Source: Octopus sinensis (Eukaryota). Taken from it: a DNA stretch of 64,000 nt. Below are positions 12,290 to 62,850 of the stretch, one piece after another. The notes below the pieces were generated by a model, which saw nothing but the letters and a program-made list of their open reading frames with translations, had not been told where the DNA came from and did not search any database. The translations under genes were made by a program, and so were the position numbers. The stretch lies in assembly GCF_006345805.1 (NCBI RefSeq), contig NC_042999.1, forward strand, positions 45,012,001-45,076,000, written 5' to 3'. How positions within the stretch are numbered: position 1 is the first letter of the stretch; every line of letters starts with the position of its first letter.

Positions 12290-13110
12290 TTCTAAACCCT
12301 CTCCTCTTCTTCCTCCCTCTCCTGCTTCCTTCTCCCTCTCCTGCTACCCCTCCCTCTCCTGCTTCCTCTTCCCTTTCCTGCTTCCTCCTCCCTCTCCTGC
12401 TTCCTCCTCCCTCTCCTGCTTCCTCTTCCCTCTCCTCTTCCATCTTTTCTTCCTCCTCCCTCTCCTCTTCCATCTTTACTTCCTCCTCCCTCTCCTCTTC
12501 CTTCTCCCTCTCCTCTTCCTTCTCCCTCTCCTCTTCATTCTCCCTCTCCTCTTCCTTCTCCCTCTCCTCTTCCTTCTCCTCTCCTCTTCCTCCTCCCTTT
12601 CCTCCTCCCTTTCCTCCTCCCTTTCCTCCTCCCTTTCCTCCTCCCTTTCCTCCTCCCTTTCCTCCTCCCTTTCCTCCTCCCTTTCCTCCTCTCTTTCCCC
12701 TACTTTCCTACTCCTTCTATTCCACCACCACCTGCTCCTTCTCCCCCTCCATTACAACCATCTCAACCCTCTCCCTCTCCACTATCTCCACCCTTTCCCC
12801 TACCTTCCTACTCCTTCTCTTCCACCACCACCTGCTCCTTCTCCCCCTCCATTACCACCATCTCAACCCTCTCCCTCTCCACTATCTCCACCCTTTCCTC
12901 CTTCCTTTCTTCCTCCCTTTCCTCCTCTCTTTCCTCCTCCCTTTCCTCCTCCCTTTCCTCCTCTCTTTCCTCCTCCATTTCTTCCTCCTTTTCCACCTCC
13001 CTCTCTTCCTTCCTTTCCTCCTCCCTTTCTCCCTCTCTTTCCACCTCCCTCTCTTTCCTCCCTCCTCTCTTCCTCCTCCATCTCTTCCCCCTCCCTTCCT
13101 CCTCCTCCTC
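12290..13110. repeat. ~820-bp polypyrimidine/polypurine tract (CT-rich trinucleotide-like repeats)
   Basis: Almost only C/T on the + strand; internal ~100-bp duplication at about 12720 and 12820. The 292-aa ORF is an artefact. Confidence 0.95.
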
Positions 13111-13111
13111 C

Positions 13112-13480
13112 TTTTGTAGGGCTGTATGTTTAACGACACTCACAAACAAACCTGTTTTTATTGCACTTTGTATTTTCTGTGTTGCTCTTTGGATGAAAAA
13201 TAATGACATTTACACACCAGGAGAGACATACAGATGGAATCTATAACAATTTATATATATCAATCTGTGGCTGGGTCATCCTCCTCCTCCTCCTCCTTTT
13301 GTAGGGCTGTATGTTTAACGACACTCACAAACAAACCTGTTTTTATTGCACTTTGTATTTTCTGTGTTGCTCTTTGGATGAAAAATAATGACATTTACAC
13401 ACCAGGAGAGACATACAGATGGAATCTATAACAATTTATATATATCAATCTGTGGCTGGGTCATCCTCCTCCTCCTCATC
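13112..13480. repeat. Tandem duplication, 185-bp period, apparently identical copies
   Basis: TTTTGTAGGGCTGTATG... begins at 13112 and again at 13297; both copies are bounded by (TCC)n. Confidence 0.9.
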
Positions 13481-19404: not shown

Positions 19405-19660
19405 TATCATCATCATCATCATCATCATCATCATCGTCATCCTTTAACATCCACCTTCCATGCTGGCATGGGTTTGACGGTTTAACAGGAGCTGGCTAGG
19501 CAGAGGACTGCACCAGACTTCTGTGTCTCTTTTAGCATGGTTTTTTTATGACTGGATGCCCTTCCTAACACCAACCACCCAGCAGTGGACTGAGTACTTT
19601 TTAATGTGGCACAAGCACAGGCGGGGTAAGTTTTGGCATAGTTTTTACGGCTGGATACCC
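19405..19660 (-). mobile_element. Family D element
   Basis: (CAT)n, TTTAACATCCACCTTCCATGCTGGCATGGG..., CTGGATGCCCTTCCTAAC. Confidence 0.7.
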
Positions 19661-20065
19661 TTCCAAATGCCAACTACTATACCGTGTGGACTAGATGCTT
19701 TTTATGTGGCACCAGCACCTCTATTTTTATTTTTATCTGTTTCTTTTATTTGACTGTGGCCATGCTGGGGCACCATTTTGAATAACTTTTAGTACCCTTC
19801 CAAACACCAACTACTATACCGTGTGGACTAGATGCTTTTTATGTGGCACCAGCACCTCTATTTTTATTTTTATCTGTTTCTTTTATTTGACTGTGGCCAT
19901 GCTGGGGCACCATTTTGAATAACTTTTAGTACCCTTCCAAACACCAACTACTATACCGTGTGGACTAGATGCTTTTTATGTGGCACCAGCACCTCTATTT
20001 TAATTTTTATGTTTCTTTTATTTGACTGTGGCCATGCTGGGGCACCATTTTGAATAACTTTTAGT
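19659..20065. repeat. Three tandem 137-bp units spanning a family D / SINE A junction
   Basis: CCTTCCAAA starts at 19659, 19796 and 19933. Confidence 0.9.
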
Positions 20066-20400: not shown

Positions 20401-20520
20401 TGAAAAGCAATCTTCTTTGAGGGACAACACTGGATGAAATGCTCATTTATAATAGATTTTAAAAGGGACTTGTTAATTACAATGATTATGAGGAAAAAAT
20501 AGTAAATAAACTCATTTTTG

Positions 20521-20700
20521 TTGTGTCTGGGGAGAGTCATTTTCTTTTTGTGTCTTATAACGTAACACACTCACCGGTAAAATTTCCACTTATTTCTTAT
20601 TTTTATTTTCCTAAAATTTTCATTGCGTCTTGCAACCTTTTTACCGGTGAGTGTGTTACATTATAAGGTACAAAAAGAAAATGACTCTCCCCAAACACAA
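20521..20700. repeat. Inverted repeat, 60-bp arms with 60-bp spacer (MITE-like core)
   Basis: 20521-20580 versus reverse complement of 20641-20700: about 4 mismatches. Confidence 0.85.
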
Positions 20701-21429
20701 CAGAATATGCTTCAACACACGAACTCATATAAAGAATCTTGCAAACCAAATCCAAGAACGAAATATAAACTCATTTTGCTTACCAGAAACCCATGCTAGC
20801 ATGGAGAACGGACGTTAAACGACGATGATGATGATGATGATGAAACTTTTAAAAATAACTGCTGAATATTATCTCAACTACCTGAGATCAATTTACACAA
20901 AATATTTACCAATTCTGCATTGAACTGATCCTTAAAATTTTTAAATACAGAAAGGACTTGTCAGGATAACACAGTCCTAGATACATTATGCCTGAAAAAA
21001 AAAAAAAAAAAAAATTGGGGATGGTTATGTTTGGAACATTTGCTTTATCAGACCTGTCTTGGAGCTAAATAATAACCTGTTTTGCCTGGCAAATTTCTCT
21101 GTAACATTCTCTACTTTCTTTAAAACGGAGACAATATGTTGTGAATCATAAAAATTTTGTTGCAACATGTCTCACAATAATGATGGGATTTCAGCCATGA
21201 ATAGAATACTAATTGAATGGTTCGTTCGATTGGTTATTGTAATTCAAGCAGAGCTGACTGGTGCTTCCATACAGTAGCAACAATGGTAATTCTTGAGGTA
21301 TTAATTTGTTTGTTTAAATCAGGGGTATGGGGAATTGCAAATACATAACAATCTGTGGGACAACAATATATGTGCTGAGAAAAATAATGAAGCTTCAATT
21401 TTACAAGTTTATAATACCATTCTCCTTTT

Positions 21430-23789: not shown

Positions 23790-24720
23790 GTCATTTGCCT
23801 GTCAGACAAAATGCTTAATGGTGTTTCTTCCGGCTCTTTATGTTCCAAGTTCAAAGGTTGACTTTGTCCCTCATCCTTTTGAGATTGATAAAAGTAAACT
23901 TATCAATTGATCATTGAAGATTGATGTAATTGACTTAACAACTGCCTCTAATATTGGTTTTAAATTTTGGCATAAGGCCAGCAATTTTGAGGGAAGAGGG
24001 ATAGTTGATTTTATCGACCCCAGTATTTAACTGGTACTTATTTTATCAACCCCCGAAAGGATTATGGGGCAAGGTCAACCTTGGTGGAATTTGAACTCAG
24101 TATGTAAAGATGGGCAAAATGTCATGAAGCATTTTACCTGGCTTGCCAATGATTCGTATTTCTTTATTGCCCACAAGGGGCTAAACATAGAGGGGACAAA
24201 CAAGGACAGACAAAGGGATTAAGTCGATTACATCGACCTCCGGTGCATAACTGGTACTTAATTTATCGACCCCCGAAAGGATGAAAGGCAAAGTTGAACT
24301 CAGCGGAATTTGAACTCAGAACGTAACAGAAAATGAAATACCTATTTCTTTACTACCCACAAGGGGCTAAACACAGAGAGGACAGACAAGGACAGATAAA
24401 TGGATTAAGTTAATTATATCGACTCCAGTGCATAACTGGTACTTAATTTATCGACCCCGAAAGAATGAAAGGCAAAATCGACCTTGGCGGAATTTCAACT
24501 CAGAACGTAGCGGCAGACGAAATACTGCTAAGCATTTCGCTCGGCTTGCTAATATTTTTACCAGCTCGCCGCCTTCGCCTCCCCCAATACTGATTTCAAA
24601 TTTTGCCACAAGGCCAGCAATTTCAAGGGAAGGGTGAAGTCGATTGTATCGACCCCCAGTGCTCAACTGGTACTTATTTTTTAACCCCAAAAGGATGACA
24701 GGCAAAGTTGACCTCAGTGG
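23790..24720. mobile_element. Cluster of at least six SINE B units, mostly antisense
   Basis: Repeated AACTGGTACTT.ATTT.ATCGACCCC.AAAGGATGAAAGGCAA motifs; multimer junction at 24335-24348. Confidence 0.85.
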
Positions 24721-32974: not shown

Positions 32975-33806
32975 GAGAGCGAAGGTTTCATCCTGGCTGC
33001 TCAAGATCAAAGCCTATTAACCCGGAACTACCAGGCCAATGTGATGAAAAATGGAGCAGACCCAAAATGCCGATTCTGCAACGACATGATTGAAACAGTG
33101 GACCACCTAATCTCTGGATGTAAAGTCTTAGCACCAGTGGAGTATAAATTAAGACATGACAGAGTTGGCCAATATCTCCACTGGCTAATAAGTCGGCATT
33201 ACAATATCAAAACTGCCGACAAGTGGTATAATCACCACCCTGAGGCTGTAACTGAAGGAGAAAATGTAACCATTCTGTGGGACTTTTCAGTACATACAGA
33301 CCGAACCATCAAGGCCAATAAACCAGATATTGTTGTGAAAGACCAAAACAATAAAGTTTGCTTATTGATCGACATGAGCATCCCCTGTGATCATAATATC
33401 TCAGCGAAAGAGTTTGACAAGCTCAGAAAATATAAAGACCTACTCATTGAAATTGAGAAAATGTGGCATCTCAAGGCGGTTACAATACCAGTGATCGTAG
33501 GAGCACTAGGAATGATCAAGAAGGGAACTGAAAATTAGATGAGAATGATCCCTGGCTTACCATCCCTGCAAGAAGTGCAAAAGATTGTCTTAACTGGTAC
33601 ATCACACGTATTGAGAAGAGCATTGTCGATGTGAGAACTGTTGCTGCTCATGTATTTTAATTTAACTTAAAAAAAAAAAAAAAAAATGAACGAACTACTG
33701 AGTTTGGTTTAATGGCCTACCAATGTATACTATGAGTTTCTTTGCCCTAGGAGTCGGGAAGACACTCGGCAAGAAATGGAAGCAAATTTGAAAGAAGAAA
33801 AAAAAA
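32975..33806 (+). mobile_element. R4/Dong-clade non-LTR retrotransposon, 5'-truncated (CCHC finger plus restriction-like endonuclease)
   Basis: AAQDQSL..., CRFC...ET.DHL.SGC, RHD, ILWD...TD....NKPDIVV, IDMSIP, K..KY.DL; premature TAG at 33536-33538; (TAA)n on both sides. Confidence 0.9.
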
Positions 33807-34080
33807 GTAATAATAATAATAATAATAATGACGACGACAACAACAACAATAATAGTTTAGAACTTTGGTAACTGGCCAGCAATTTCTGCTGAGGGAATAA
33901 GTCAAAAACATCAATTCCAGAACTCAATGGGTACTTATTTTATCAACCCTGAAAGAATGAAAGGCAAAGTCAACCTTGGTAGAGTCTGAACACAGAATGT
34001 AAAGACAGATGAAATGCCACTCAGCATGGTGACAATTCTGCCAACTTACAACCTTAGTAAAAATAAGAATAATATTAATG

Positions 34081-34175
<95 letters not shown>

Positions 34176-34177
<2 letters not shown>

Positions 34178-35941
34178 ACGCTCTCTCCACTCCTTTTCTG
34201 CTTGGCACTGTCACCTCTATCTGATATGCTAAATAGAACTGGATGCGGATATAAATGTTACGGCAAAACGATCAGCCACCTTTTATATATGGATGACCTA
34301 AAACTATACGCTGCAAATGACAAACAGCTGGAAACACTATTAAAGACAGTTCATGGATTTACCAAAGAAATAGATATGAAATTTGGATTAGAAAAATGCG
34401 CCAAAGTAACCATGAAAAGAGGAAAACTAGTTAAGAGTAACAACATCACACTAGATAAAACCAATGAAATAAAAGAATTAGACCAAAGCCAAACTTACAA
34501 ATACTTAGGAATCCATGAACTAGATAAGACACAACACACACAAATGAAAGAGAAAATAAAAAAAGAATATTATAGACGAGTTAGATCAATACTAAAAACA
34601 GAGCTCAATGCTAAAAACAAGATAATAGGTATCAACACTTTAGCTGTCCCAGTTATAAGTTACAGCTACAATATCCTTAACTGGACACGAAATGAACTGT
34701 CCAAAATAGATATGAAAACAAGAAAAATACTGACAGGATCTAGGATGCATCACCCAAAATCTGACATAGAAAGACTATATATACAACGTATAGAAGGTGG
34801 TAGAGGCCTTATACAGCTGGAAAACTACTATAAAATAACCACCATAGGACTGCAAAAATACCTACTTCAGAAGGAAGGAAAACTGATCCAGATAGCAGCA
34901 AAACACGAGCAAAACAAAAAACTGTTCTCAGTATTTAAGGAAGCTGACAAATACAAACAAGAAATCATACCACCTAATAAACACAAAGAAGAAGAAGAAG
35001 ATGATGAAGAAACAACAAAAGCTATAAAACAAATGAAATCCAAACTAAAAATAGAACAGCAACGAGCCATGATAAAACGATGGCAAGAAAAACCCCTTCA
35101 TGGTAAATACTGCACTAAACTAAACGCAAAAGAAATAGACAAAGAAAAATCCCAGCAATGGTTGAGAAGCTCAGGACTCAAAGCAGAAACAGAGGGATTT
35201 TTAATTGCAGCACAAGACCAAAGCCTCCCCACCAGAAATTACCAAAAACATGTAATGAAAAGAAATATTACAAGTAACTGCAGAATATGTGGAGATGGAC
35301 AAGAAACAATAAATCATATTATCTCTAGCTGCCCAGTCCTGGCTAAGAAGGAATATATTCACAGACATGACAGAGTTGGAACCTACATACATTGGAAGCT
35401 ATGCCAACATTATGGAATAACAACAGAAAAAAAATGGTATAGGCACACACCAGAAAAGGTCACAGAAAACGAGAAAGCAACCATACTCTGGGATATGCCG
35501 ATACACACAGATAGAGAAATTAAGGCCAACAGACTAGATATAGTTGTCAGAGATCATGAGAAAAAAAAATGCTTTCTAATTGATGTATCAATACCGGCAG
35601 ATGACAACGTGTCTCTAAAAGAAATGGAGAAACTCTCAAAATACAAAGACCTGGAAATAGAGGTAACTAGAATGTGGAACCTGAAAACAGAAACAATTCC
35701 TATCATAGTAGGTGCATTAGGCATGATAAAAAATATTCAGACAAATACATAACAAAAACACCAGGACTTACAAACACATATAACATACAGAAAATTGCAC
35801 TACTAGGCACTGCACACATCCTACGCAGAACACTTTCCATACAATAACCATCAGAGCATCACAACAAATCACAGCACATACCCAAGGCACACAGAGCTGC
35901 GCTCGGTAGTGAAGTGAAAGCACGCTATAAAAATAAAACTA

Positions 35942-35945
<4 letters not shown>
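34176..35945 (+). mobile_element. R4/Dong-clade non-LTR retrotransposon, 5'-truncated (RT C-half plus CCHC plus RLE)
   Basis: TLSPLLFCLAL..., HLLYMDDLKLY, YKYLG, CRIC...ETINHI.SSC, RHD, NRLDIVV (canonical PD changed to LD); frameshift near 35735; begins and ends in (TAA)n. Confidence 0.93.
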
Positions 35946-35975
<30 letters not shown>

Positions 35976-36194
35976 TAATAAGGATAATGATAATAATAAT
36001 AATAATAAAATAATAAGGATAATGATAATAATAATAATAATAATTATAATAATAATAATAAATCTAAGTGAATTCTGAATACAACAAATTTCGGAATTAG
36101 ACATACAAGTAACAAGCACAGAAAAATCTAAGTGCATGAAAACCCGTGCTAAAACTGCTGCTGCTGCTGCTGCTGCTGCACCACCACCACCACC

Positions 36195-36246
<52 letters not shown>

Positions 36247-36269
36247 TGATGATTGCCCTGATGCAGTAC

Positions 36270-36720
36270 CAGGCAGTGGTTCTCATAGATTCTGATCTTA
36301 ACTGATTGGAAGTGTTATCATGTACATTCAATACCACAGTGCTTGTCAGTCACTTGACCTTAACCAATGAAGTATGTCCCTTAGTGGCTGATGATATGAC
36401 CATCTCTGATCATAAGCACAAGTAGTAGGGGAGCATCATAGTCATGTGTTGAGAGGGATTCTTCAAGAAGAATTCATGGGTGTTTTGTTCATCATCCTTA
36501 AACAAACCTTATTCAGGGATTTTTTTGAATGGGATGGGCTACTCAAACTCAAGAAAATTCTAACTGGGCCCTACCTGCTAGGACATGCACTATTTGTCTT
36601 GATATAAGGTCAGCATGTCACGCACAAATGGTTGTGAAGCATGTGCCTGGTTTACCCTTATCAGACGGATAGTTATGATAAGCTTCGTATATTGTACTCC
36701 AGTGTCACTTAATAACATGC
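36270..36720. mobile_element. Unclassified interspersed repeat (tentative)
   Basis: GC-richer block bounded by trinucleotide microsatellites; only one copy in the window. Confidence 0.25.
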
Positions 36721-37225
36721 ATTGCTCTCTCACTCAATAATAATAATAAAGATGATGATGATAATAATTATCCTTCCTACTATAGGCGCAAGGTCTGAAA
36801 TTTTGTGGGAGAGAACTAGTTAATTATATTGTACCCCAAAAGGACAAAAGGTAAAGTTAACCTCAGTAGAATGTTTGAACTCAGAATGTAGAGACAAATG
36901 AAATGCTGCTAAGTATTTCATCCAACATGCTAGTGGTTCTGCCAACTTGCCCCTTTAATAATGATGATAATAATCCTTTCTACTAGAGGCATAATTTTGT
37001 GGTGATGCCGGTGGTGGGTGCTAGTCAATGACATTGACTCCAGCATCCATATGGTACTTATTTCATCAACCCCCTCAGAACATAAAGCTGGAAGAAAACC
37101 CACAATGTATTTTTGCTGGAATGGTAACAATTCTGTCCGCTCACCACCTTAATAATAATACTAATGATAATAGTAATAATAATCATAATGATGAGGATAA
37201 TAATAATAATAATAATAATAATGAC

Positions 37226-37273
<48 letters not shown>

Positions 37274-37330
37274 AATAATAATAATGATCATAATAATAAC
37301 GATAAGAATAATAATAATAGTTATAATGAT

Positions 37331-38965
37331 GCTTTCCTCATTAACAACTACATCTTCCTTGATTAACAAAAAAATGATGTAAATGATGGTTTTATGGATT
37401 CTGGATCAACTGTTAATTGACAAAATGATTCTTGACGATCGTCACAACAAAAAGAAAAAAGAAACATCTCTCAGTGGCGCTGAGAGACCACAAGAAGGCT
37501 TTTGATGGTCTTCCTCACAGCTGGATAAAAGAATGCTGGGAGATGTTCAAAATCTCACCAGTAATCAGGAAGTTTGCATCTCACACCATGAAGCGCTGAA
37601 AAACAACATTAATTCTCAACACTGACACTACAAATATAAACATTGGACAACTCGATATTAATTGTGGAATCTTTCAAGGAGACTCATTATCTCCTTTGTT
37701 ATTCTGTTCAGCACTGTTTCCTCTAAGTAAACACCTGAATGGAACAAAATGTAGAAACAGGGAATATGAAAAAAAACAAAACCCGGTTAATCATCTCTTC
37801 TCTACGGAAGATTTGAAACTGTTCACAAAAAATGTTCAGCAGTTGCAAGCTCTCTTACCTGCAGTCAAACATGTAGTGATAACATCAAATGGAATTTGAA
37901 CCTGGCAAATGCACCTAGGCTGCATTTACCAAGGGAAGACTATCAAACACATTCAGCATCACTATAGATAGAGACACCGAGATGAAAGAATTAGAACCTA
38001 AGGACAGTTTTAACTAGGAGTAGATAAAGGAGATGGGATTAAACTCTCACTAATGAAAGGAAATATAAGGAAGGAGTTCTATAGAAGAGTAAGAATCATT
38101 CTGAAAACTGAGCTGAATACCAAAAGCAAGATTGAGACCATAAACACACTGGCCATGCCTGTAATCCCCTACAGCTTCAATTTTATAAATTAATCCCTCT
38201 TTAAGGTCAACAAAGCTGGTATCAAAATATGAAGGCTGATGACAATGCATCATAGCCGTCACTCCAAAGCAAACACAAATTGAATATATCTCCTGAGAAA
38301 AGAAGTTGGTTGGGGGTTGATACAATCTCAGCTCTCATTAAAAATTGCAACCATAGGACTTTCTGCTTATCTGCAACAAGCAAACGACAGGACGTTAAAG
38401 CTGGTTTTGAGGCTTGAAGATATCAAAACGTTGTATGAGGGGACAAAAATACAAAAATATACCTCTAAGAAATGCATCTAGATAAACCAGTACCTGAAGA
38501 AAATGTGTCCCCAACAGACAAGGCAAAACAAATAAAACTGTAGTTAAACAAACTAGGCTGAAATATATTAAGGAGAAATGTGAGCAAAGGCCACTGCATG
38601 GCAAGTACCTGAATAGAATCAGGGACCCTGATGTTGATCAAACTCTTACTCATCAGTGGCTCTAATGCACTTGTATTCAACCAGAAATGAAGGGGTATAT
38701 CATTGCTGCTCAGGAGAAGTCCCTTCCATCTAGGAATTATCAAAATTATGTCCTGAAACATGAAAGCAGCTCATCATACTGTATATGCAGAGTGCACCTA
38801 GAGACAATTCACCACATAATCTCTGGATGCAGCAATATGGCACCAACAGAATACTTGCAAAGGCATGACAAGGCAGTTCAGTACATACACTGGCCAATAT
38901 ACTGCACACATAACCTCCCTCCCAAACATGATTGGTGGGAACACAAGTCAAAGGCAATCCTAGCT
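37331..38965 (+). mobile_element. Older degraded R4/Dong-clade copy
   Basis: KKAFDGLPHSWIKE, GIFQGDSLSPLLFC, HLF...DLK, GYIIAAQEKSLP.RNYQ, CIC...ETIHHIISGC, RHD; many stops and frameshifts; follows (AAT/GAT)n. Confidence 0.85.
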
Positions 38966-39700
38966 TCAGAGTTCTTACTGTTGGTTTCTTCTTCAATTTT
39001 TACACCTGTTGACGGTGTTAATGCCAAGATAGGCAAACCAGTCAGATTTCTGAGAATTGTCATTTACCATGACCTGAAGCTCTCTGTACAGGTTTCTAAA
39101 CATAGGCCAGTGTATAAATTTATTCTTCTTTACAGCTTCCTTTACTTTGTGATGGCTTGAAGATGGTTGGTGTTGTATCATTTACATTTAATATAACACC
39201 TGATGCAAGGTGGCAGACTGGCAGAAACATAAGCATGCTGGGAAAAATGCTTGACAGCATTTTGTCTGTTCTTGTGTTCTGAGTTCAAATTCTGCCAAGG
39301 TTGACGTTGCCTTTCATCCTTTTGGGGGTCGATAAAATAAGTACCAGTTGTACATGGGGGAGCGGATGGGGGGATCAATTTAATCGACTGCATCCCCTCC
39401 TCCAAAATTGCTGGCTTTGATGCAGATGCAGATGGTACAGCTGTTAAAACCTCAGTCAGCACTGCCGTAAACATTAAGCCTAAAATGAATTCCATTCTTA
39501 AACTACCATTATTACACAAGCTTATGAGAAAGCCTCTATGTAGTCGTCCAGTCTGTAAGAAATAGCAACAAAATTCTCTTATTTATCAACATAATCTCAA
39601 AATACCTTTAAAAGATTGGATAGTCAAGGCTGGAAGGCTGTTTAATCATAGGTCTTCTCAGTCAATATTGATCTGGATAAACATTAAAATATTAACTGGC

Positions 39701-41122: not shown

Positions 41123-42236
41123 TGAGGTGCTTTCAAAAAAGTATCTGAATTTATTTTTTCCTTCCAAAACTAATGCCACGTGGATAAAATCCTCAGAGTA
41201 GGAGGTGACGCCACCCTTCCTGCACATACCTGAAAATTTTTGTGCTGGTAGGTTGTGTCAGTTCTTGGCTGTTATGCCTGGAGTACAGACGTGTAGTGCA
41301 CATTTGTCGGATTTTCATTTTTACCAAATCCATCAACTTTTGCCAATAGCTTGGTGATACTCAAGCCCAAACCATCCAGAAGATTCAACAGGCTTTTGGC
41401 GATGTTGCCATGAGTAAAACTCAGATCAAGGAGTTGTACAACTGCTTCAAACATGGTTGCACCTTAGTGGAGAGTGAGACACACTTAGACAGACCATCCA
41501 CAAATCTAAAGAAGGAGCTGATTGAGAAGGTTCAGGTAATAGCCATGAAAGGCTACTGTGTAACAATCCAGGAAATTGCTCATGAAGTGGGAATTAGCAC
41601 AGGAACAGTGCTTATTTTAACCCTTTTGTTACTGTATTTCTGTTGAGATGCTCTGTGTTTCTTTCAGCTACTTTAAATATATAACAAAGAATTTAGTAAA
41701 ATAACTTAGTTATCATTCAGCTAGTGTTAGGAACATAAATTGTGACTAAGGAATGGTGGAAGATTTTAATTCAAAACTTATGGAAACAAGACATTTGTAC
41801 TCAGAGCCAGAGCCAGTTTCAGCCGGGTTGGTAACGAAAGGGTTAACGGGATATTTGTGCTTGCAGAGAGTGAAATTCATCCTCAAGGCGCTTGTGGAGC
41901 AGTAGAAGCAACTCCATGTAGAAATCACTCAAAACATGCTGAACTGTGCAAACCACAACCCAGACTTTATGAAGACCATCCTCACTGGTGATAAGACATG
42001 GATTTATGGTCTCTGCTCAATGTGCTCGTTCATCTTGCATGAAAAAAATCCAATGAGTGTGCACTAAACCTGTGTACTCTAGGTGCAACAGCCAGGAATT
42101 GATGTGGCCTACTAGTATGAAAATTTTCACACATGCACAGGAAGAATGATGTCACCTTCCAACCAAAGGATTTTGCCATGCAGCATTAATTTTAGTGAGG
42201 AAAAAGCAAAGCTGGATACTCTTTGAATGCACCTCG
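41123..42236 (+). mobile_element. Mariner-family transposon, internally deleted
   Basis: TIRs TGAGGTGCTTTCAAAAAAGTATC / GATACTCTTTGAATGCACCTCG with TA TSDs; transposase remnants LGDTQAQTIQKIQQAFG..AMSKTQIKE, RPST, ILTGDKTWIYG. Confidence 0.9.
41621..41842. mobile_element. piggyBac-type MITE nested in the mariner
   Basis: TTAA|CCCTTTTGTTAC ... GTAACGAAAGGG|TTAA. Confidence 0.85.
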
Positions 42237-44053: not shown

Positions 44054-44565
44054 AAGGCGGCAAGCTGGCAGAAACATTAGCACACTGGGTGAAATGCTTA
44101 GCGGTATTTCGTCTGTTTCATTCTGAGTTCAAATTCCGCTGAGGCCGACTTTGCCTTTCATCCTTTCGAGGTCGATTAAATAAGTACCAGTTACGCACTG
44201 GGGTATTTATAATCGATTTAATCCATTTGTCTGTCCTTATTTGTCCTCTCTGTGTTTAGCCCCTTGTGGGTAGTAAAGAAATAGGTATTTCGTCTGCCGT
44301 TACGTTCTGAGTTCAAATTCCACCGAGGTTGACTTTGCCTTTGATCCTTTCGGGGTTGATTAAATAAGTACCAGTTACGCACTGGGGTCGATATAATCGA
44401 CTTAATCCGTTTGTGTGTCCTTGTTTGTCCTCTCTGTGTTTAGCCCCTTGTGGGCAGTAAAGAAATAGGTATTTCGTCTGCTGTTACGTTCTGAGTTCAA
44501 ATTCCGCCGAGGTCGACTTTGCATTTCATCCTTTCAGGGTCGATAAAGTAAGTACCAGTTACTAA
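44054..44565 (+). mobile_element. SINE family B trimer
   Basis: GGTATTTCGTCTG at 44103, 44284 and 44468; units 2 and 3 lack the A-box. Confidence 0.9.
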
Positions 44566-47063: not shown

Positions 47064-47545
47064 AGAATATCTATTTCTTTACTACTCACAAGGGGCTAAA
47101 CACAGAGAGGACAAACAAGGACAGACAAATGGATTAAGTCGATTATATCGACCCCAGTGCATAACTGGTACTTAATTTATCGACCCCGAAAGGATGAAAG
47201 GCAAATTCGACCTTGGCAGAATTTGAACTCAGAATGAAACAGCAGACGAAATATGGCTACGCATTTCGCCCGGCATGCTAACATTTCTGCCAGCTCCAGA
47301 ATACCTATTTCTATTTCTTTATTACCCACAAGGGGCTAAACACAGAGGGGACAAACAAGGACAGACATAGGTATTAAGTCGATTACATCGACCCCAGTGC
47401 ATAACTGGTACTTAATTTATCGACCCCGAAAGGATGAAAGGCAAATTCGACCTTGGCAGAATTTGAACTCAGAACGAAACAGCAGACGAAATACGGCTAC
47501 GCATTTCGCCCGGCATGCTAATGTTTCTGCCAGCTCCAGAATACC
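47064..47545 (-). mobile_element. SINE family B tandem pair of full units separated by a TSD-like AGAATA(C/T)C
   Basis: Period about 240; the short motif occurs at 47064, 47298 and 47537. Confidence 0.85.
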
Positions 47546-51311: not shown

Positions 51312-51555
51312 TAAGTTCCCGACCTGTTTCCTCTTTTCATTGTTTTTGCAAGCCTTATTATTATGTATCCCCATCTAATAGCGTTATCGTTGTCTTTCGT
51401 CTCAAATGCTAGCTGAAGCATAAAAACTTTCACTCAAAAAACTTATTCACACCACCGCAAAGCATTTCATCTCATCCTGTCTTCTTTCTGCCGCCTAAAA
51501 CCTCATCTCCAATTCTCTCTCTCGCTATGTGGTGTCGGTTCTCCCTCTGTTTTCA

Positions 51556-51592
<37 letters not shown>

Positions 51593-51920
51593 CTATCTAT
51601 CTCTCTCTCTCTCTCTCTCTCTCGGTATATATCTCACCTTCACTCGCTTCCGCAGGATGAAAAATCATCAGCTAAGTTCCCGACCTGTTTCCTTTTCATT
51701 GTTTTTGCAAGCCTTATTATTATTGTATCCCCATCTAATAGCGTTATCGTTGTCTTTCGTCTCAAATGCTAGCTGAAGCATAAAAACTTTCACTCACAAA
51801 AACTTATTCACACCACCGCAAAGCATTTCATCTCAATCCTGTCTTCTTTCTGCCGCCTAAAACCTCATCTCCAATTCTCTCTCTCGCTATGTGGTGTCGG
51901 TTCTCCCTCTGTTTTCACTG

Positions 51921-51952
<32 letters not shown>

Positions 51953-52210
51953 TCTCTCTCTCGGTATATATCTCACTTCACTCGCTTCCGCAGGATGAAA
52001 AAACATCAGCTAAGTTCCCGACCTGTTTCCTCTTTTCATTGTTTTTGCAAGCCTTATTATTATGTATCCCCATCTAATAGCATTATCGTTGTCTTTCGTC
52101 TCAAATGCTAGCTGAAGCATAAAAACTTTCACTCACAAAAACTTATTCACACACCGCAAAGCATTTCATCTCAATCCTGTCTTCTTTCTGCCGCCTAAAA
52201 CCTCATCTCC
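51312..52210. repeat. Tandem array of ~340-360-bp monomers (two full, one partial), each with an internal (CT)n
   Basis: TAAGTTCCCGACCTG at 51312, 51673 and 52011. Confidence 0.95.
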
Positions 52211-56040: not shown

Positions 56041-56681
56041 ATATACGTATGTATGTATGTATGTATGTATGTATGTATGTATAAAGTGTTTGAAGTGGTG
56101 TACAGATATATATTGAGAAAAAAGAGGCAGTCAGAATGTTGGATAATCCTTTATTAGAGCTTTCATTCATTTTCCGAACTCGTCAAGACAAAATCATTGT
56201 CTTGACGAGTTTATAAATGAAATGAAAGTGCAAATATAGGATTATCCAACATTCTCACTGCCTCCTTTTTTCTCAAGATATATATATATATATATATATT
56301 GTGGGTGTGCAGGTGTGTGTTTGTGTGTATCCTTGTTTTGATATCATTTGGTAGTTACCAACAAGTTTTGTTTGTTTCTAGTCTCCTGTGAAGAACATGG
56401 GAAATATTATTACCTTGCATGGAAACAGGTGAGGGTTGATGATAGGAAGGGCATCTGGCCATAGACAATACATCTCAACAAATTTCATGTGAATCATGCA
56501 AGCATGGAAAAGTTGATGTTAAAATGATGATGTTGCTGATGCTGATGATGACGACGATGATGATGACAACGACGATGATGATATTTAGAAACAAATTTAA
56601 GTCTTCAAATACCATCGGTACCACTAGCACCACCAGCTACCACCAACACTACTAGTACAACCAGATCCAATGCCATCATTG

Positions 56682-57697: not shown

Positions 57698-59270
57698 CTA
57701 CCTATACAGAGCCATTTGAAAAATCTACAAACTAACCAGTTGGAGCATAAGCCAGCAAGAATACAGAGGTCAGATTTGGAACCAGAGGTCATGAAGACGG
57801 TTTGCCAGAAGAGGTAGCAGCATTTTGATTAAATTGAAACGATGCAGGTGCTATCACACAGCTTTTTCATTTATAGCTGACAGCCTTGTAATACTAAAGA
57901 CAGCCAGACAACAGAATTAATGATACTGAATATAGCAGCTTGTCACACAATGCTTTCACTTCACCAGATCTCGATGTAACAGAAACACCATCCAACAAAT
58001 TACCAGCACCAAACAGTCAAAGAATTCTTCTTCAAATTTAGCTAACCTCCATTTGGTGTGTATTTAGCCAAATGCAACAGTTCAATTCTGACAGTTATGT
58101 GATAAAGTATAATTTGTTTTATACTGTTTCTATGGCTAAATTATCTTTGTGAACAATGTATTCCTTTCTGTGTTAAGACAGTTACTATATTGTAAGAACT
58201 ATTAAGTTAATTTCTTGCTTCCAAACTGCATGAAGTGCTGATTCAAGTCTCATTAGACCTTTTGTATATAATATTTTTGACCACGTTCGCTTGTTTTTGA
58301 CCTCTCCATTGGTTTTAGCCATACTTTCTTTATGTAGTTTCAGCATAATAAAAATCAGTCATTTTTATTATCTTGGTTTGGACATTTATCTATAAAATTA
58401 CCACAGGTGTATGCATCAAGAAAAAGACAAGACTCAATTCTGTTTAATGCCAGTCACATCACACAAGTTGCTAGACTGAAGTTGAAGACAATATCAAATT
58501 GCCTTAAGAAGTCTATCTCCTGATTTTAGGTGGTTAAACAAACTTCAATACTTAGTTGGTACTGGTTCTCTTTTTTAACTCTAGAAAAATGAAAGACATT
58601 ATTATTAATGTTATTATTTTTAATGCTGTTGTTTTATGTTGTGAGTTCAAATATTGGCATGGTTGACTTTAGGGTTGATAAAATAAGTACCAGTCAAGTA
58701 CTTGGGTTAATGTAGTCAACTCCCCAAAATTACAGGTCCTGTGCCTATAATCCTTTCTACTATAGGCACAAGGCCTGAAACTTTGGGGGAGGGAGCTAGC
58801 TGATTTCATTGACTCTAGTATGTAACTGGTACTTATTTTATTGATCCTGGAAGAATGAAAGGCAAAGTTAACCTCAGTAGAAATTGAACTCAAAACATAA
58901 AGATGGATGAAATACCACTAAGCATTTTGCCTGGCATGCTAACGATTCTGCCAGTTTGCCACCTTTTCCTTACAATTGAAAGCATTATTATTAATGTTGT
59001 TTTATGTTCAGAGTTCAAATATTACTGAAGTTAACTTTGCTTTCCATATTTTTGGAGTCAATATAATAAAGTACCATTTGAGTACCAGTGTAAATTTATT
59101 TGGCTTACCTTCTCCCCTAAAATTGCTAGCCTTGTGCCAAAATTGGAAAGAATAATTGATGTTGTTGTTTGCCTGTTTTACTTAATTTATGTTACTTCCC
59201 TTAGTATAATGCAAAAGAAAAGTAGGTAGGAACATACAATTGTATTATATGGGTAATTGTATTATATGGG

Positions 59271-59505: not shown

Positions 59506-60406
59506 ATATGGGTAAAAGCAAGGCAGTGAGCTGGCAGAGTCATTAGCATGCAGGGTGAAATGCATTATGGTATTTCACCCATTTTTACATTCTGAGTTCA
59601 AGTACTGGGACTAATTCAATCAGTTTATACCAATCTCTCTGAATTTAAAATCTTGTTACTATGTTCCATAAAGAGCATAGGTCCAGTTTCCTAGTTTCTC
59701 TGATGTACACATCCCTCCCAGGGTGGGAAGCTTGTCTGTCCCAGGATTACTCATTTTTACCAGCTGAGTGGAGTGAAGAAATGTGAAATGAAGTGTTTTG
59801 CTCAAGAACACAATGCACTGCCCAATCCAGGTATCGGAACCACAATCTTATGATCATGAATGTAACACCCTCACCACTAAGCCATGCACCTCCAAAAATC
59901 AAAGTCAGGGAGTATAGTATACTATACAATAAGCAGTTGAGGGTCAAAATCCTTAGAGTGTCAAACAAAATGCCTTGCATCATTTGTTCCTGTTCTAAGG
60001 TAATGGTTAGACAGAATCTTTAGAGCACCAGAAAATATCTTGTTGTATTTCTTCTAGATCTTTGTGCTCTGAGTACCAATCCCCGAGGTCAAATTTGCCT
60101 TTCATCCCTTCAAGGTTGATAAAATAAAGTATGAGTCAAGTTTTGGGGTCATTGCTATCAACTAACCCCCAACTCTTAAAATTGTTGGTCTTGTGCCTAA
60201 ATCAGAAAATATTATTTGCTCTAGCCCTTTAGATTTCATTCATGATTTACCTATATAATAATGGTTTCAAATTTGGGCACAAGGTCAGCAATTACAGAGG
60301 AGGGAGCAAGTCGATTACATCAACCCCAGTGCTCAACTGGTACTAATTTTACATTATTTACATTATTTACATTTGACGGATATTTGTCCTCATCTTGTTA
60401 GTTGGT

Positions 60407-60452
60407 AACACAATGTTTCAGCTGATATACTCTCCAGCCTTCTTCAGGTGTC
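60407..60452 (-). ncRNA. Second hammerhead copy with a mutated stem III (GAAACATT)
   Basis: Reverse complement reads GACACCTGAAGAAGGCTGGAGAGTATATCAGCTGAAACATTGTGTT. Confidence 0.5.
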
Positions 60453-60762
60453 TTGGAGAAATTTTGAACTTGGGTTCTCATTCCTAAGGTATTTTTCGAT
60501 GTTGTTGTTATTATTATTATTATTATTGTTATTGTTCAGAATCAAACTCAGAATCATTGGGTTAGTAGCCTGCGCTCTTAACCACTACGCCATATGCCCG
60601 TGGGCATAGTGGTTAAGAGCATGGGCTACTAACCCCAAGATTTCGAATTCGATTTCAAGCAGTGACTTAAACAATAACAACAACAACAACAACAACAACA
60701 ATAATAATAATAACATCGAAAAATACCTAAGGAATGAGAACCCAGGTTCAAAATTTCCTCAA

Positions 60763-60808
60763 GACACCTGAAGAAGGCTGGAGGGTATATCAGCTGAAAC
60801 GTTGTGTT
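60763..60808 (+). ncRNA. Minimal type I hammerhead ribozyme motif (PLE-like)
   Basis: GACAC-CTGAAGA-A-GGCTG(10 nt)CAGCT-GAAAC-GTT-GTGTT: stem I GACAC/GTGTT, stem II 5 bp, palindromic ACGT stem III, predicted cleavage after GUU (60803). Confidence 0.6.
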
Positions 60809-61289
60809 ACCAACAAACGAGATGAGGAAAAATAGCCATCGAATGTAAATAATGTAAATAATGGAAATAATGTACATAATTCCTCATCTCTTAAATATAG
60901 AACTGGTACTAATTTTATCAACCCTGAAGGGATGAAAAGCAAAAGCATACATGCATACATACATACAGTCATGGGTATGTAACATACTGCCTAAATACCA
61001 ATCTTCAAAAATTAGGCTTCTCAACACCAGAAAGGAGAAAGCTGATTTGAAGACTACAAATCCAAGCCATCACTGTGAGCATATCTAGATCTGAAAGTAT
61101 ATGCATGTGTAGATATACATAAAACAAAACATAAAAATCTGCATGTATACATACATACATACATACATACATGCATACGTACATATGTAGATACATGCAT
61201 ACATGCATATGTACATATATTCTCACACAAACACATACAACTCTATCTTCATATGTAACAGTTCATATATATATATATATATATATCTT

Positions 61290-62350
61290 TTACTCTTTTA
61301 CTTGTTTCAGTCGTTTGACTGCAGCCATGCTGGAGCACCGCCTTTAATCGATAACTCGACCTCGGGACTTATTCTTTTGTAAGCCCAGTACTTATTCTAT
61401 CAGTCGCTTTTGCTGAACTGCTAAGTTACGGGGACATAAACACACCAGCATCGGTTGTCAAGCAATGCTAGGGGGACAAACACAGACACACAAACACACA
61501 CACGTATATATATATATATATACATTTATTACACACATGTGAGTGAGAACACTTTGAGATATTTTTGGTATCTAACATATGTCAGATACTGTGAGTGCTG
61601 CTTCTGATTGGTCAATCCATGCTGATGACCCGAGGTCACGGTGACGGCGCTATTTTTGTCATTCATAAGTTACAACTAAACTTCATTCATTACTTTCACG
61701 AGCAGGTAGAATGTAGCCATGTAATTAAACAAACATACTATCTTTTTTATACCAGATATCACTTAAAGTCAAAGATTCAATCTGTGTTATGTATTTCTTG
61801 AACGTGAACTTGAATGTTAACAAAATTTTAAACAGTCATCAGTTATCAGTCATTTCACCTGAAAACTTAGCGCTATAAAGTCAGACTATCTTCCTGCGGC
61901 ATGACATCTTTTACAGTTACACATTGTGACGTCACTGACGTGAAATCAAGCTGTATTCATGCGCGCTTCAACACGATGTGAAGAATTTAGTTATTGGGTT
62001 AATAAAATATGGTCGTTTATTCGTGTGTAATAAATAAAATACCAAACTCATTCCCTATGGATACCGTATTTATTACAATGAGTGGCTTGTAAACGTATCT
62101 AACTCGCTTTCGCTCATTAGATACGTTTACAAGCCACTCGTTGTAATAAATACGGTATCCATAGGGAACTCGTTTGGTATTCTCTATATATACGACGGGC
62201 TTCTTTCAGTTTCCGTCTACCAAATCCACTCACAAGGCTTTGGTCGGCCCGAGGCTATAGTAGAAGACACTTGCCCAAGGTGCCACACAGTGGGACTGAA
62301 CCCGGAACCATGTGGTTGGTAAACAAGCTACTTACCACACAGCCACTCCT
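61290..62350 (-). mobile_element. SINE family A split by a ~680-bp insertion in its internal (TA)n
   Basis: Tail and body 61290-61505; head 62190-62350. Confidence 0.75.
62038..62181. repeat. Palindrome with 65-bp arms and a 14-nt loop at the end of a CpG-containing insert (about 61560-62185)
   Basis: 62038-62102 versus 62117-62181: 4 mismatches; loop CTCGCTTTCGCTCA. Confidence 0.9.
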
Positions 62351-62412: not shown

Positions 62413-62850
62413 ATACTAAGCAATAAGGGTTTAGCAACGAGTTGCCTTACCACATACCGAATTTAGAAATAGCAGTCAAAGGGTTATAGCTATTTCTTCT
62501 ACTAAAAAGGGAGATCTCAGTAAAAACAGCATTTGGAAGGCAGACACAAACAGGTAAGAGAGAATGAATTGACTGCAATCTATCATACATTTTTTTAGTT
62601 ATCCACGGACGTACGTTTCGAAATCAAGTTTTAAGGAAAGCTCGAAACGTACGTCCGTGGATAACTAAAAAAATGTATGATAGATTGCAGTCAATTCATT
62701 CTCTCTTACCTGTTTGTGTCTGCCTTCCAAATGCTGTTTTTACTGAGATCTCCCTTTTTAGTAGAAGAAATAGCTATAACCCTTTGACTGCTATTTCTAA
62801 ATTCGGTATGTGGTAAGGCAACTCGTTGCTAAACCCTTATTGCTTAGTAT
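62413..62850. repeat. Perfect 209-bp inverted repeat with a 20-nt spacer (PLE-like fold-back)
   Basis: 62413-62621 / 62642-62850, no mismatch found by eye; inner ends read TCGAAACGTACGTCCGTGG. Confidence 0.95.

What the first reader, a model, noticed from the sequence alone, without database searches (positions are those of the whole stretch)
60335..60916. Two SINE copies inserted head-to-head in one event (single 16-bp TSD)
Seen: the minus and plus copies of family F meet at their tRNA heads (2-nt spacer, 60600-60601) with tails outward, and the whole 550-bp palindrome is flanked by one duplicated 16-mer of the host SINE B. Ordinary twin priming inverts part of one RNA and does not give two head-plus-tail copies. 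Inference: either both target nicks primed on separate RNAs, which hammerhead-mediated dimerisation could co-deliver, or a PLE-style fold-back copied the unit. It also makes a divergent Pol III promoter pair and a ~250-bp dsRNA/cruciform.
Basis: partly seen in the sequence, partly recalled or inferred. Interest (0 to 1): 0.7.

Follow-up and report, generated by a model that had tools for sequence, protein, structure and literature searches.

The report
Head-to-head retroposon pair, one insertion
Two copies of a short tRNA-headed retroposon sit head-to-head inside an older repeat and share one 17-bp target duplication, an arrangement already described as the usual insertion footprint of Penelope-like retroelements, so this is a clear example of a known process rather than a new one.

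Summary
A minus-strand copy (60352-60599) and a plus-strand copy (60602-60900) of one short element meet at their tRNA-like 5' ends. The pair is flanked by a perfect 17-nt (not 16-nt) direct repeat. Joining the flanks rebuilds an uninterrupted copy of the host SINE.

The arms are not identical: 92% in the 3' body and about 80% in the head. The right arm has a 37-nt 3' extension that the left arm lacks, and it lacks 7 nt at its 5' end. The right arm is the only match in the 64-kb window to a minimal hammerhead descriptor (0 matches in 100 shuffles). Rfam reports no hammerhead.

Four features together match the published insertion signature of Penelope-like elements (PLEs): head-to-head inverted copies, a single TSD, a 30-40-bp "tail" on one end only, and a minimal hammerhead. 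A purified PLE protein nicks and extends both DNA strands from two RT start sites.

Best reading (about 0.55): one PLE-type event primed on both strands. Fold-back copying, a LINE enzyme, or two separate insertions are not excluded. No other family-F copy and no PLE could be retrieved, so the enzyme assignment is inferred. I rate it a new member of a known kind, of modest interest.

The parts
60335..60351 (.). Left copy of the 17-bp target-site duplication AACTGGTACTAATTTTA. Its last 4 nt (TTTA) could equally be read as the complement of the tail repeat, a possible priming microhomology.
60352..60599 (-). Left arm: a family-F copy of 248 nt on the minus strand. It is full length at the 5' end (tRNA position 1) and has the short 3' end of 2.4 nine-nt repeats.
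60538..60599 (-). tRNA-derived head of the left arm. The A box TGGCGTAGTGG at element positions 8-18 (60582-60592) matches TRGCNNAGTGG exactly. A B-box-like AGTTTGATTCT lies at positions 52-62 (60538-60548). A CTACTAA loop lies at positions 32-38.
   Evidence: sequence read. ARAGORN and Rfam do not call a tRNA.
60502..60536 (-). Internal (AAC)n(AAT)n microsatellite of the left arm.
60407..60452 (-). Decayed copy of the minimal hammerhead motif. It is the same as in the right arm except for a loop-II change and a CG-to-CA change at position 16.2, which breaks the palindromic helix III.
60600..60601 (.). GT at the centre of the inverted junction, flanked by the palindrome TATGCCC / GGGCATA.
60602..60900 (+). 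Right arm: a family-F copy of 299 nt on the plus strand. It lacks 7 nt at or near the 5' end and carries the long 3' end.
60602..60669 (+). tRNA-derived head of the right arm. The A-box-like GGGCATAGTGG (10/11) lies at 60602-60612 and the B-box-like AATTCGATTTC at 60646-60656. A-to-B spacing is 44 nt, as in the left arm.
60670..60713 (+). Internal (AAC)n(AAT)n microsatellite of the right arm. Its block lengths differ from those of the left arm.
60763..60808 (+). Minimal type-I hammerhead motif. Order of parts: helix I GACAC/GUGUU (5 bp), core CUGAAGA, one unpaired A, helix II of 6 bp (two G-U pairs), GAAA, palindromic ACGU in place of helix III, then U17. The predicted cut is after 60803.
   Evidence: the only match in 64 kb on both strands, and 0 matches in 100 dinucleotide shuffles. 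Not found by Rfam.
60842..60877 (+). Four tandem 9-nt units (AATGTAAAT-like) forming the 3' repeat tail. The left arm has 2.4 units (60352-60373).
   Evidence: (family D4)
60864..60900 (+). 37-nt 3' extension present only on the right arm. It consists of two more degenerate 9-mers plus the unique sequence AATTCCTCATCTCTTAAATATAG.
   Evidence: unique in the window
60901..60917 (.). Right copy of the 17-bp target-site duplication. It contains the first TTTT downstream of the right arm, a possible Pol III stop.
60257..60334 (-). Left part of the interrupted host SINE (family B, antisense on the plus strand). It continues at 60918 to about 60945.

Best explanation
One retrotransposition event inserted two copies of a short tRNA-headed, non-coding retroposon (family F) into an older SINE.

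Shown by the sequence:
- The target was opened by nicks 17 bp apart.
- In the product, each arm's antisense (cDNA) strand is continuous with the 3' end of one TSD copy.
- The tails point outward and the heads meet in the middle.
- One arm starts 37 nt further 3' on the template than the other.
- Each arm carries a minimal hammerhead motif, intact in one arm and decayed in the other.

Inferred:
- Both 3'-OH ends primed reverse transcription of F RNA, one at a proximal and one at a distal start site.
- Both cDNAs ran to the RNA 5' end, or to within 7 nt of it, and were joined there.
- The enzyme was that of a Penelope-like element, and F is its non-autonomous passenger.

Whether one RNA was copied twice or two RNAs were used is not resolved. 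The insert is probably neutral today. If transcribed through, it would form a long imperfect hairpin.
For: Structure, TSD and exact empty site.

Both arms span the same sequence from the tRNA head to the repeat tail.

The one-sided extension is 37 nt. This is within the 30-40-bp (31 bp in rotifers) optional 'tail' found at one end of PLE insertions (PMC8557442, PMC3846280). That tail corresponds to the interval between two RT start sites (PMC11167929).

The same work shows that the PLE protein cleaves and extends both top and bottom strands and is predicted to be a dimer.

In PLEs the head-to-head arrangement is the one 'most frequently observed', with the whole unit flanked by one TSD and palindromes at the inverted junction (PMC3846280). 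Here the junction is TATGCCC-GT-GGGCATA.

The minimal hammerhead motif is found once in 128 kb searched and 0 times in 100 shuffles. It has the PLE-type traits of an unpaired nucleotide after A9, a long helix II, a short helix I and a palindromic 15.2-16.2 (PMC4209133).

Dual minimal hammerheads on opposite strands 100-700 bp apart are reported in S. mansoni (PMC4209133).

Fold-back starting from the left arm is excluded, because no inverted copy of the left flank follows the right tail.

Active PLE families exist in octopus genomes (PMC13282606). That the window comes from an octopus is only my recollection of its SINE content.
Against: - No PLE reading frame or PLE 3' end is present in the window. 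Only LINE RT/zf-RVT and mariner fragments were found.
- No other family-F copy could be obtained, so it is unknown whether the 37 nt is a family-wide 'tail'.
- Rfam covariance models give no hammerhead even at E<=10.
- The motif has G-U rather than the conserved G10.1-C11.1 pair, and the two arms show no compensatory changes.
- The monomer MFE fold is not the hammerhead.
- A 3' end made of 9-nt tandem repeats is also what LINE-dependent SINEs carry.
- The TSD of 17 bp is longer than the 8-10 bp reported for rotifer PLEs (PMC3846280).
- There is no direct partial tandem (pLTR).
- The arms differ by indels in the head, which neither proves nor excludes two templates.
Confidence: 0.55

Rival explanations
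1. Single priming followed by fold-back. One cDNA was made from the right-hand nick, including the 37-nt extension. At the RNA 5' end its own 3' end snapped back and copied the cDNA, giving the second arm. That arm was then joined to the left target end by TAAA/TTTA microhomology before reaching the end of the template.
For: The centre is a small palindrome with a 2-nt loop. Arkhipova et al. read such junction palindromes in PLEs as signs of self-priming (PMC3846280). Fold-back would automatically make both arms end at the same 5' position. Most arm differences are transitions, several at CpG sites, compatible with decay from identical arms.
Against: It needs premature termination 37 nt short of the template end. 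The arms differ by a complex indel of about 13 nt and by differently built microsatellites. The left arm begins exactly at tRNA position 1 with correct A-box and B-box positions, so the shared end is a real RNA 5' end and needs no fold-back to explain it. In vitro, the PLE protein primes on both strands (PMC11167929).
Confidence: 0.2
2. The same two-sided priming, carried out by a LINE reverse transcriptase (twin priming on a second RNA or a second pass). Family F would be an ordinary LINE-dependent SINE, and the hammerhead-like motif would be fortuitous or inactive.
For: The 3' end is a 9-nt tandem repeat of variable copy number, as in many LINE-dependent SINEs (own knowledge). LINE RT fragments are in the window. 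The left nick site TAATTTT/A is T-rich. Rfam finds no hammerhead.
Against: No similarity exists between the F tail and any LINE fragment in the window. The hammerhead descriptor match is not expected by chance. [quoted passage not shown] Twin priming gives non-overlapping parts of one RNA, not two complete copies. The one-sided 30-40-nt extension is described as PLE-specific (PMC8557442).
Confidence: 0.15
3. Two independent insertions. The second family-F copy landed, inverted, exactly at the 5' end of the first without making its own target duplication.
For: The arms are 8% (body) to about 20% (head) diverged and differ by indels. PLE endonucleases can home to their own sequences (PMC11167929). 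Nested SINE insertions are common in this window.
Against: Neither arm has its own TSD. The second insertion would have to hit a window of 1-8 bp, in the opposite orientation, and leave both copies of the first TSD outermost. The reported self-targeting is to the tail region, not the 5' head.
Confidence: 0.08
4. The 550-bp palindrome is a DNA element (MITE or foldback transposon) that moves as a unit, like the other hairpin-shaped elements in this window.
For: At least four MITE-like palindromes lie in the same window: 20516-20705, 56106-56283, 62030-62189 and 62413-62850.
Against: The inverted repeat abuts the TSD on one side only, with 37 unpaired nt on the other. A 17-bp TSD is outside the 2-11 bp range of known DNA transposon superfamilies (own knowledge). 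Each arm has SINE anatomy: a tRNA-like head with A and B boxes at positions 8 and 52, a microsatellite, a body and a repeat tail.
Confidence: 0.02

Closest known systems
Insertion architecture of Penelope-like elements (inverted pLTR pairs with a one-sided 'tail'); Arkhipova et al. 2013 PMC3846280, Craig et al. 2021 PMC8557442, Frangieh et al. 2024 PMC11167929
   Same: An inverted copy lies adjacent at the 5' end (head-to-head). The whole unit is flanked by a single TSD. There is a small palindrome at the inverted junction. A 30-40-bp extension sits at the 3' end of only one arm (37 nt here). A hammerhead motif lies a few tens of nt upstream of the 3' ends. The target is AT-rich (13/17 A/T).
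   Different: There is no RT/GIY-YIG reading frame and no direct partial tandem (pLTR). Both arms are complete short units with a tRNA-like Pol III head, not 5'-truncated copies of a long element. The TSD is 17 bp, against 8-10 bp in the rotifer examples. No sequence link to an autonomous PLE could be tested.
Sm-alpha / Sj-alpha SINE-like retroposons of Schistosoma (tRNA-derived, carrying a type-I hammerhead); PMC2770079, PMC8490949
   Same: A short non-coding retroposon with a tRNA-derived 5' part and a hammerhead motif in the body.
   Different: Sm-alpha carries a canonical hammerhead that Rfam-type searches find in thousands of copies. Family F has only a minimal, helix-III-less motif that Rfam misses. 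The host phylum differs.
Minimal hammerheads of metazoan PLEs (Cervera & de la Pena 2014, PMC4209133)
   Same: Core CUGANGA...GAAA. One unpaired nucleotide between A9 and 10.1. Helix II longer than usual (6 bp). Helix I of 4-5 bp. Palindromic 15.2-16.2 with no loop 3. Pairs of motifs on opposite strands 100-700 bp apart.
   Different: The 10.1-11.1 pair is G-U instead of the conserved G-C. Only two copies are available, so there is no covariation evidence. Activity is untested.
L1 twin priming (Ostertag & Kazazian 2001, cited in PMC13141329)
   Same: Both ends of a staggered break prime cDNA synthesis. The product has an inverted and a direct segment under one TSD.
   Different: Twin priming yields two different, non-overlapping parts of one RNA. 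Here both arms contain the same complete sequence.

Membership tests
tRNA-derived SINE | Internal Pol III promoter: A and B boxes at tRNA-like positions | tested here: met
   In the left arm the A box TGGCGTAGTGG at positions 8-18 matches the consensus exactly, and the B-box-like sequence at 52-62 matches 8/11. The right arm has 10/11 and 8/11 with the same 44-nt spacing. ARAGORN and Rfam call no tRNA.
tRNA-derived SINE | Short, non-coding, flanked by a target-site duplication | tested here: met
   The arms are 248 and 299 nt. The only ORFs are short chance ORFs with no homologue. The TSD is 17 bp.
tRNA-derived SINE | Many dispersed copies in the genome | not testable with these tools
   Only these two arms are in the window. 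Nothing was found in the reachable collections.
tRNA-derived SINE | 3' end shared with an autonomous partner element | not testable with these tools
   No match to the LINE fragments in the window. No PLE is available for comparison.
PLE-type insertion | Inverted copy adjacent at the 5' end, with the whole unit under one TSD | tested here: met
   definition from PMC3846280 and PMC8557442
PLE-type insertion | Optional 30-40-bp tail at the 3' end of one arm only | tested here: met
   The 37-nt extension at 60864-60900 is absent from the left arm. Whether it recurs in other copies is untested.
PLE-type insertion | Hammerhead motif in the terminal repeat | tested here: inconclusive
   The minimal-HHR descriptor matches once, with 0 matches in 100 shuffles. 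There is no Rfam hit and the 10.1-11.1 pair is G-U.
PLE-type insertion | Direct partial tandem (pseudo-LTR) | tested here: not met
   No direct repeat of the unit is present.
PLE-type insertion | Telomerase-like RT plus GIY-YIG endonuclease partner sharing the terminal sequence | not testable with these tools
   The Pfam scan of window ORFs found only RVT_1/zf-RVT of LINE type and a mariner HTH.
Hammerhead ribozyme (type I) | Conserved core C3-A9, G12-A14, A15.1-U16.1 and H17, with helices I and II | tested here: met
   Right arm 60763-60808. The left arm is broken at position 16.2.
Hammerhead ribozyme (type I) | Match to the Rfam covariance models; stable helix III | tested here: not met
   No hit at E<=10. 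Helix III is replaced by the palindrome ACGU.
Hammerhead ribozyme (type I) | Self-cleavage | not testable with these tools
   This needs an in vitro transcription and cleavage assay.
L1-type twin priming | Inverted and direct segments are different parts of one RNA | tested here: not met
   The arms align over their whole length.
MITE / foldback DNA transposon | Terminal inverted repeats abut a short TSD on both sides | tested here: not met
   There are 37 unpaired nt between the right arm's repeat and the TSD, and the TSD is 17 bp.

The most novel reading that the evidence does not exclude
Family F is a Pol III-transcribed tRNA-SINE that parasitises Penelope-like elements in a cephalopod. Complete head-to-head dimers would be its regular insertion product, because a dimeric PLE particle carries two F RNAs, possibly held by the palindromic hammerhead region, and primes on both target strands at once. 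That would make F a natural reporter of the still unresolved PLE integration mechanism.
Probability: 0.25. Interest if true: 0.55.

Novelty: new member of a known kind. Interest (0 to 1): 0.35.

Why it matters
PLE integration is the least understood retrotransposition mechanism in animals. Two-sided priming has been shown only in vitro for one lizard element.

A short Pol III-driven passenger whose two arms are both complete gives a clean genomic read-out of three things: both priming sites (17 bp apart), both RT start sites (37 nt apart), and the 5' joining step.

If family F proves to be PLE-dependent genome-wide, it would add a mollusc counterpart to the schistosome Sm-alpha elements. It would also help classify part of the large pool of 'unclassified SINEs' reported for octopus genomes (PMC13282606).

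Locally, the insert creates a potential hairpin of about 250 bp (-326 kcal/mol). This could serve as a dsRNA substrate if the region is transcribed. It has no demonstrated function.

Tried and rejected
1. Rfam on the whole window at gathering thresholds, and on 60300-60950 and 60520-60685 at E<=10. No hammerhead and no tRNA were found. The only hits were sub-threshold miRNA-precursor models, which reflect the central hairpin. ARAGORN found no tRNA.

2. Search for further family-F copies:
- BLAST of the arms, and of heads and tails separately, within the window found none beyond microsatellite hits.
- A protein-space search with the two longest F-derived ORFs found no candidate.
- Exact and gapped DNA patterns in the metagenome, viral and prokaryote genome collections gave 0 hits.

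3. Reaching same-species contigs through the 516-aa LINE ORF. The best homologues were only 55-57% identical over the full length, or 70% over 64% of the query. The one contig fetched (L001, GCA_024449705.1) is 75% identical at the DNA level, so it is another species.

4. Supplement of the O. vulgaris repeat paper. No sequence library is held.

5. MITE reading. Rejected on the TSD length and the asymmetric ends.

6. Assembly artefact. Rejected because the arms are 8-20% diverged.

7. The 17-mer as a chance repeat or as two different host-SINE copies. Rejected because of the shared private variant and the gap-free empty site.

8. Covariation support for the hammerhead from the two arms. There is none: the differences are in loops or break pairs.

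9. Literature search for head-to-head SINE dimers made by LINE twin priming. Nothing relevant was found.

Full report
WHAT IS THERE

Reading 59900-61400 and the repeat scan confirm an imperfect palindrome. BLAST of the window against its reverse strand reports a self-palindrome at 60348-60867, 79% identical over 541 columns.

- The left arm (60352-60599) is on the minus strand.
- The right arm (60602-60900) is on the plus strand.
- They meet at ATGCCC-GT-GGGCAT.

THE DUPLICATION IS A REAL TARGET-SITE DUPLICATION

Joining the left flank through 60351 to the right flank from 60918 gives a sequence that aligns across the junction, without gaps, to about twenty other copies of the host SINE ('B') in the window. 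In a multiple alignment, the left flank plus repeat and the repeat plus right flank overlap exactly in the 17-mer. Both copies carry ACTAATTTT, where six other B copies have ACTTATTTT or ACTTAATTT. Nothing was lost from the target.

ANATOMY OF THE UNIT (FAMILY F)

- The left arm starts with GGGCATA. It has an exact A box (TGGCGTAGTGG, positions 8-18), a CTACTAA loop at positions 32-38 and a B-box-like AGTTTGATTCT at positions 52-62, which is tRNA numbering.
- The right arm has the A-box-like GGGCATAGTGG at its very start and the same 44-nt A-to-B spacing. It therefore lacks 7 nt. This can be described either as a 5' truncation with GT(G) filler or as a 7-nt internal deletion; the two are indistinguishable.
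- Neither ARAGORN nor Rfam calls a tRNA, so the head is a decayed tRNA derivative.
- Behind the head come an (AAC)n(AAT)n microsatellite, a 150-nt body, and AATGTAAAT-like 9-nt repeats.
- There is no TTTT on the sense strand of either arm. The first one after the right arm lies in the TSD.
- There are no other F copies in the window.

THE ARMS COMPARED

- Body: 150 aligned nt with 8 transitions and 4 transversions, K2P 0.085. Four of the differences are CpG decay.
- Head: about 80% identity, mostly explained by independent CpG decay (for example GCGCAGGC versus GCATGGGC), plus a complex indel of about 13 nt after the B box.
- Microsatellite: the same block order but different block lengths.
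- 3' end: the left arm stops after 2.4 nine-mers, directly at the TSD. TTTA/TAAA is a possible 4-nt priming microhomology there. The right arm continues for 37 nt (60864-60900): two more degenerate 9-mers and then AATTCCTCATCTCTTAAATATAG, which is unique in the window.

THE HAMMERHEAD CLAIM

Rfam finds no hammerhead, at gathering thresholds or at E<=10. I wrote a minimal type-I descriptor with these parts:
- helix I of at least 4 bp
- CUGANGA
- 0 or 1 unpaired nt
- helix II of at least 4 bp
- GAAA
- a 15.2-16.2 pair with an optional palindromic loop
- U16.1 and H17

It matches once in the 64-kb window on both strands, at 60763-60808 in the right arm, and never in 100 dinucleotide-preserving shuffles. 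The match has a 5-bp helix I, one unpaired A after A9, a 6-bp helix II and ACGU in place of helix III. The left arm has the same motif, broken by a CG-to-CA change at position 16.2.

These traits are the ones listed for the minimal hammerheads of metazoan Penelope-like elements (PMC4209133). The exception is that 10.1-11.1 is G-U rather than G-C.

Further limits on the claim:
- The monomer does not fold into the hammerhead as its MFE structure, which is expected for motifs thought to act as dimers.
- The self-complementary stretch is only AACGUU (-5.7 kcal/mol).
- There is no covariation evidence from two copies.
- The descriptor was written after I had seen the sequence, although it follows the published one.

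HOW THE PAIR AROSE

Strand polarity is informative. In each arm, the antisense (cDNA) strand is continuous with the 3' end of a TSD copy. This is what results if both 3'-OH ends of a 17-bp staggered break were extended by reverse transcription.

Classical twin priming is excluded, because the arms are the same sequence and not two parts of one RNA.

A MITE is excluded by the 17-bp TSD and the one-sided 37-nt gap between the inverted repeat and the TSD.

An assembly artefact is excluded by the divergence between the arms.

Two independent insertions would need a TSD-less hit within a few bp of the first copy's 5' end.

Fold-back from the left arm is excluded, because no inverted left flank follows the right tail. 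Fold-back from the right arm needs termination 37 nt early.

COMPARISON WITH WHAT IS KNOWN

The combination seen here is the published signature of PLE insertions.
- Craig et al. [quoted passage not shown]
- Arkhipova et al. 2013 (PMC3846280): an inverted pLTR completes the insert, flanked by one TSD. [quoted passage not shown] Head-to-head is the most frequent arrangement. There are palindromes at the junction. pLTR sequences suffice for mobilisation in trans.
- Frangieh et al. 2024 (PMC11167929): the purified protein cleaves and extends both strands, unlike R2 and L1. It starts reverse transcription at two internal sites, and the interval between them is the tail. It is predicted to be a dimer. 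The hammerhead lies tens of nt upstream of the start sites. Here the predicted cut at 60803 is 60 and 97 nt upstream of the two 3' ends.
- Cervera & de la Pena 2014: already noted dual minimal hammerheads 100-700 bp apart on opposite strands.
- tRNA-derived SINE-like elements with hammerheads are known from schistosomes as Sm-alpha and Sj-alpha (PMC2770079).
- Octopus vulgaris has 30 recently active Penelope families (PMC13282606). That the window comes from an octopus is my recollection of its SINE sequences and was not verified.

VERDICT

The single-event reading is the best one. The mechanism is most likely PLE-type two-sided target-primed reverse transcription of a non-autonomous tRNA-headed element (confidence about 0.55). 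Fold-back (0.2), a LINE enzyme (0.15) and two events (0.08) are alternatives.

The weak points:
- No second F locus and no PLE could be retrieved.
- There is no Rfam support for the ribozyme.
- The 9-mer repeat tail would also suit a LINE partner.

If the arms were identical at birth, and if the octopus calibration of PMC13282606 applies (JC 0.09 at about 25 My), the insertion is roughly 10-15 My old. This is only an order-of-magnitude estimate.

CONSEQUENCES

A transcript through 60340-60910 would fold into a hairpin of about 250 bp (-326 kcal/mol; shuffles -115 +/- 6; z = -33). The two heads form a divergent pair of decayed Pol III promoters whose transcripts would both be sense F and therefore not complementary to each other. 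No function is indicated.

Noticed in passing
window 62413-62850: A 438-bp hairpin-shaped element with 209-nt arms that are 100% complementary and a 20-nt loop. It sits next to a (TA)n run with TA-type flanks. It is either a very young MITE-like element or an assembly fold-back. The perfect identity contrasts with the 76-90% arm identity of the other palindromes in the window.
   Followed up: partly
window 20516-20705, 56106-56283, 62030-62189: Three further short MITE-like palindromes of 160-190 bp with 76-90% arm identity. Two are embedded in or next to TA microsatellites. They have no tRNA boxes.
   Followed up: partly
window 58640-58960 and 60060-60945: The host SINE family B occurs twice as tail-to-tail inverted pairs. 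The spacers are about 13 nt and about 40-55 nt. The second pair is the one that received the family-F insertion.
   Followed up: partly
window 24157-24525, 44103-44562, 47070-47545: Family-B-containing units form short head-to-tail tandem arrays. The periods are 186, 184 and 240 nt, with 2-2.5 copies at 86-95% identity.
   Followed up: no
window 32975-39157: Fragments of LINE reading frames (RVT_1 plus zf-RVT), the longest being 516 aa at 34202-35752. The best database relatives are only 55-57% identical over the full length and come from corals, fish, shrimp and metagenomes. A 368-aa protein from assembly GCA_024449705.1 is 70% identical over 64% of the query.
   Followed up: partly
window 41350-41643: An ORF fragment with a weak match to the Mos1-type transposase HTH domain (HTH_48, E = 2.4e-4, below the Pfam cut-off). 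It is probably a mariner relic.
   Followed up: no
window 13097-13477, 19656-20065, 51312-52210: Young long-period tandem duplications: period 185 nt with 2.1 copies at 100% identity, period 137 nt with 3.0 copies at 98%, and period 339 nt with 2.6 copies at 93%.
   Followed up: no
window 60540-60654: The centre of the palindrome draws weak hits to several miRNA-precursor covariance models (for example MIR9677, 35 bits against a gathering score of 90). These are generic hairpin matches and not evidence of a miRNA.
   Followed up: yes
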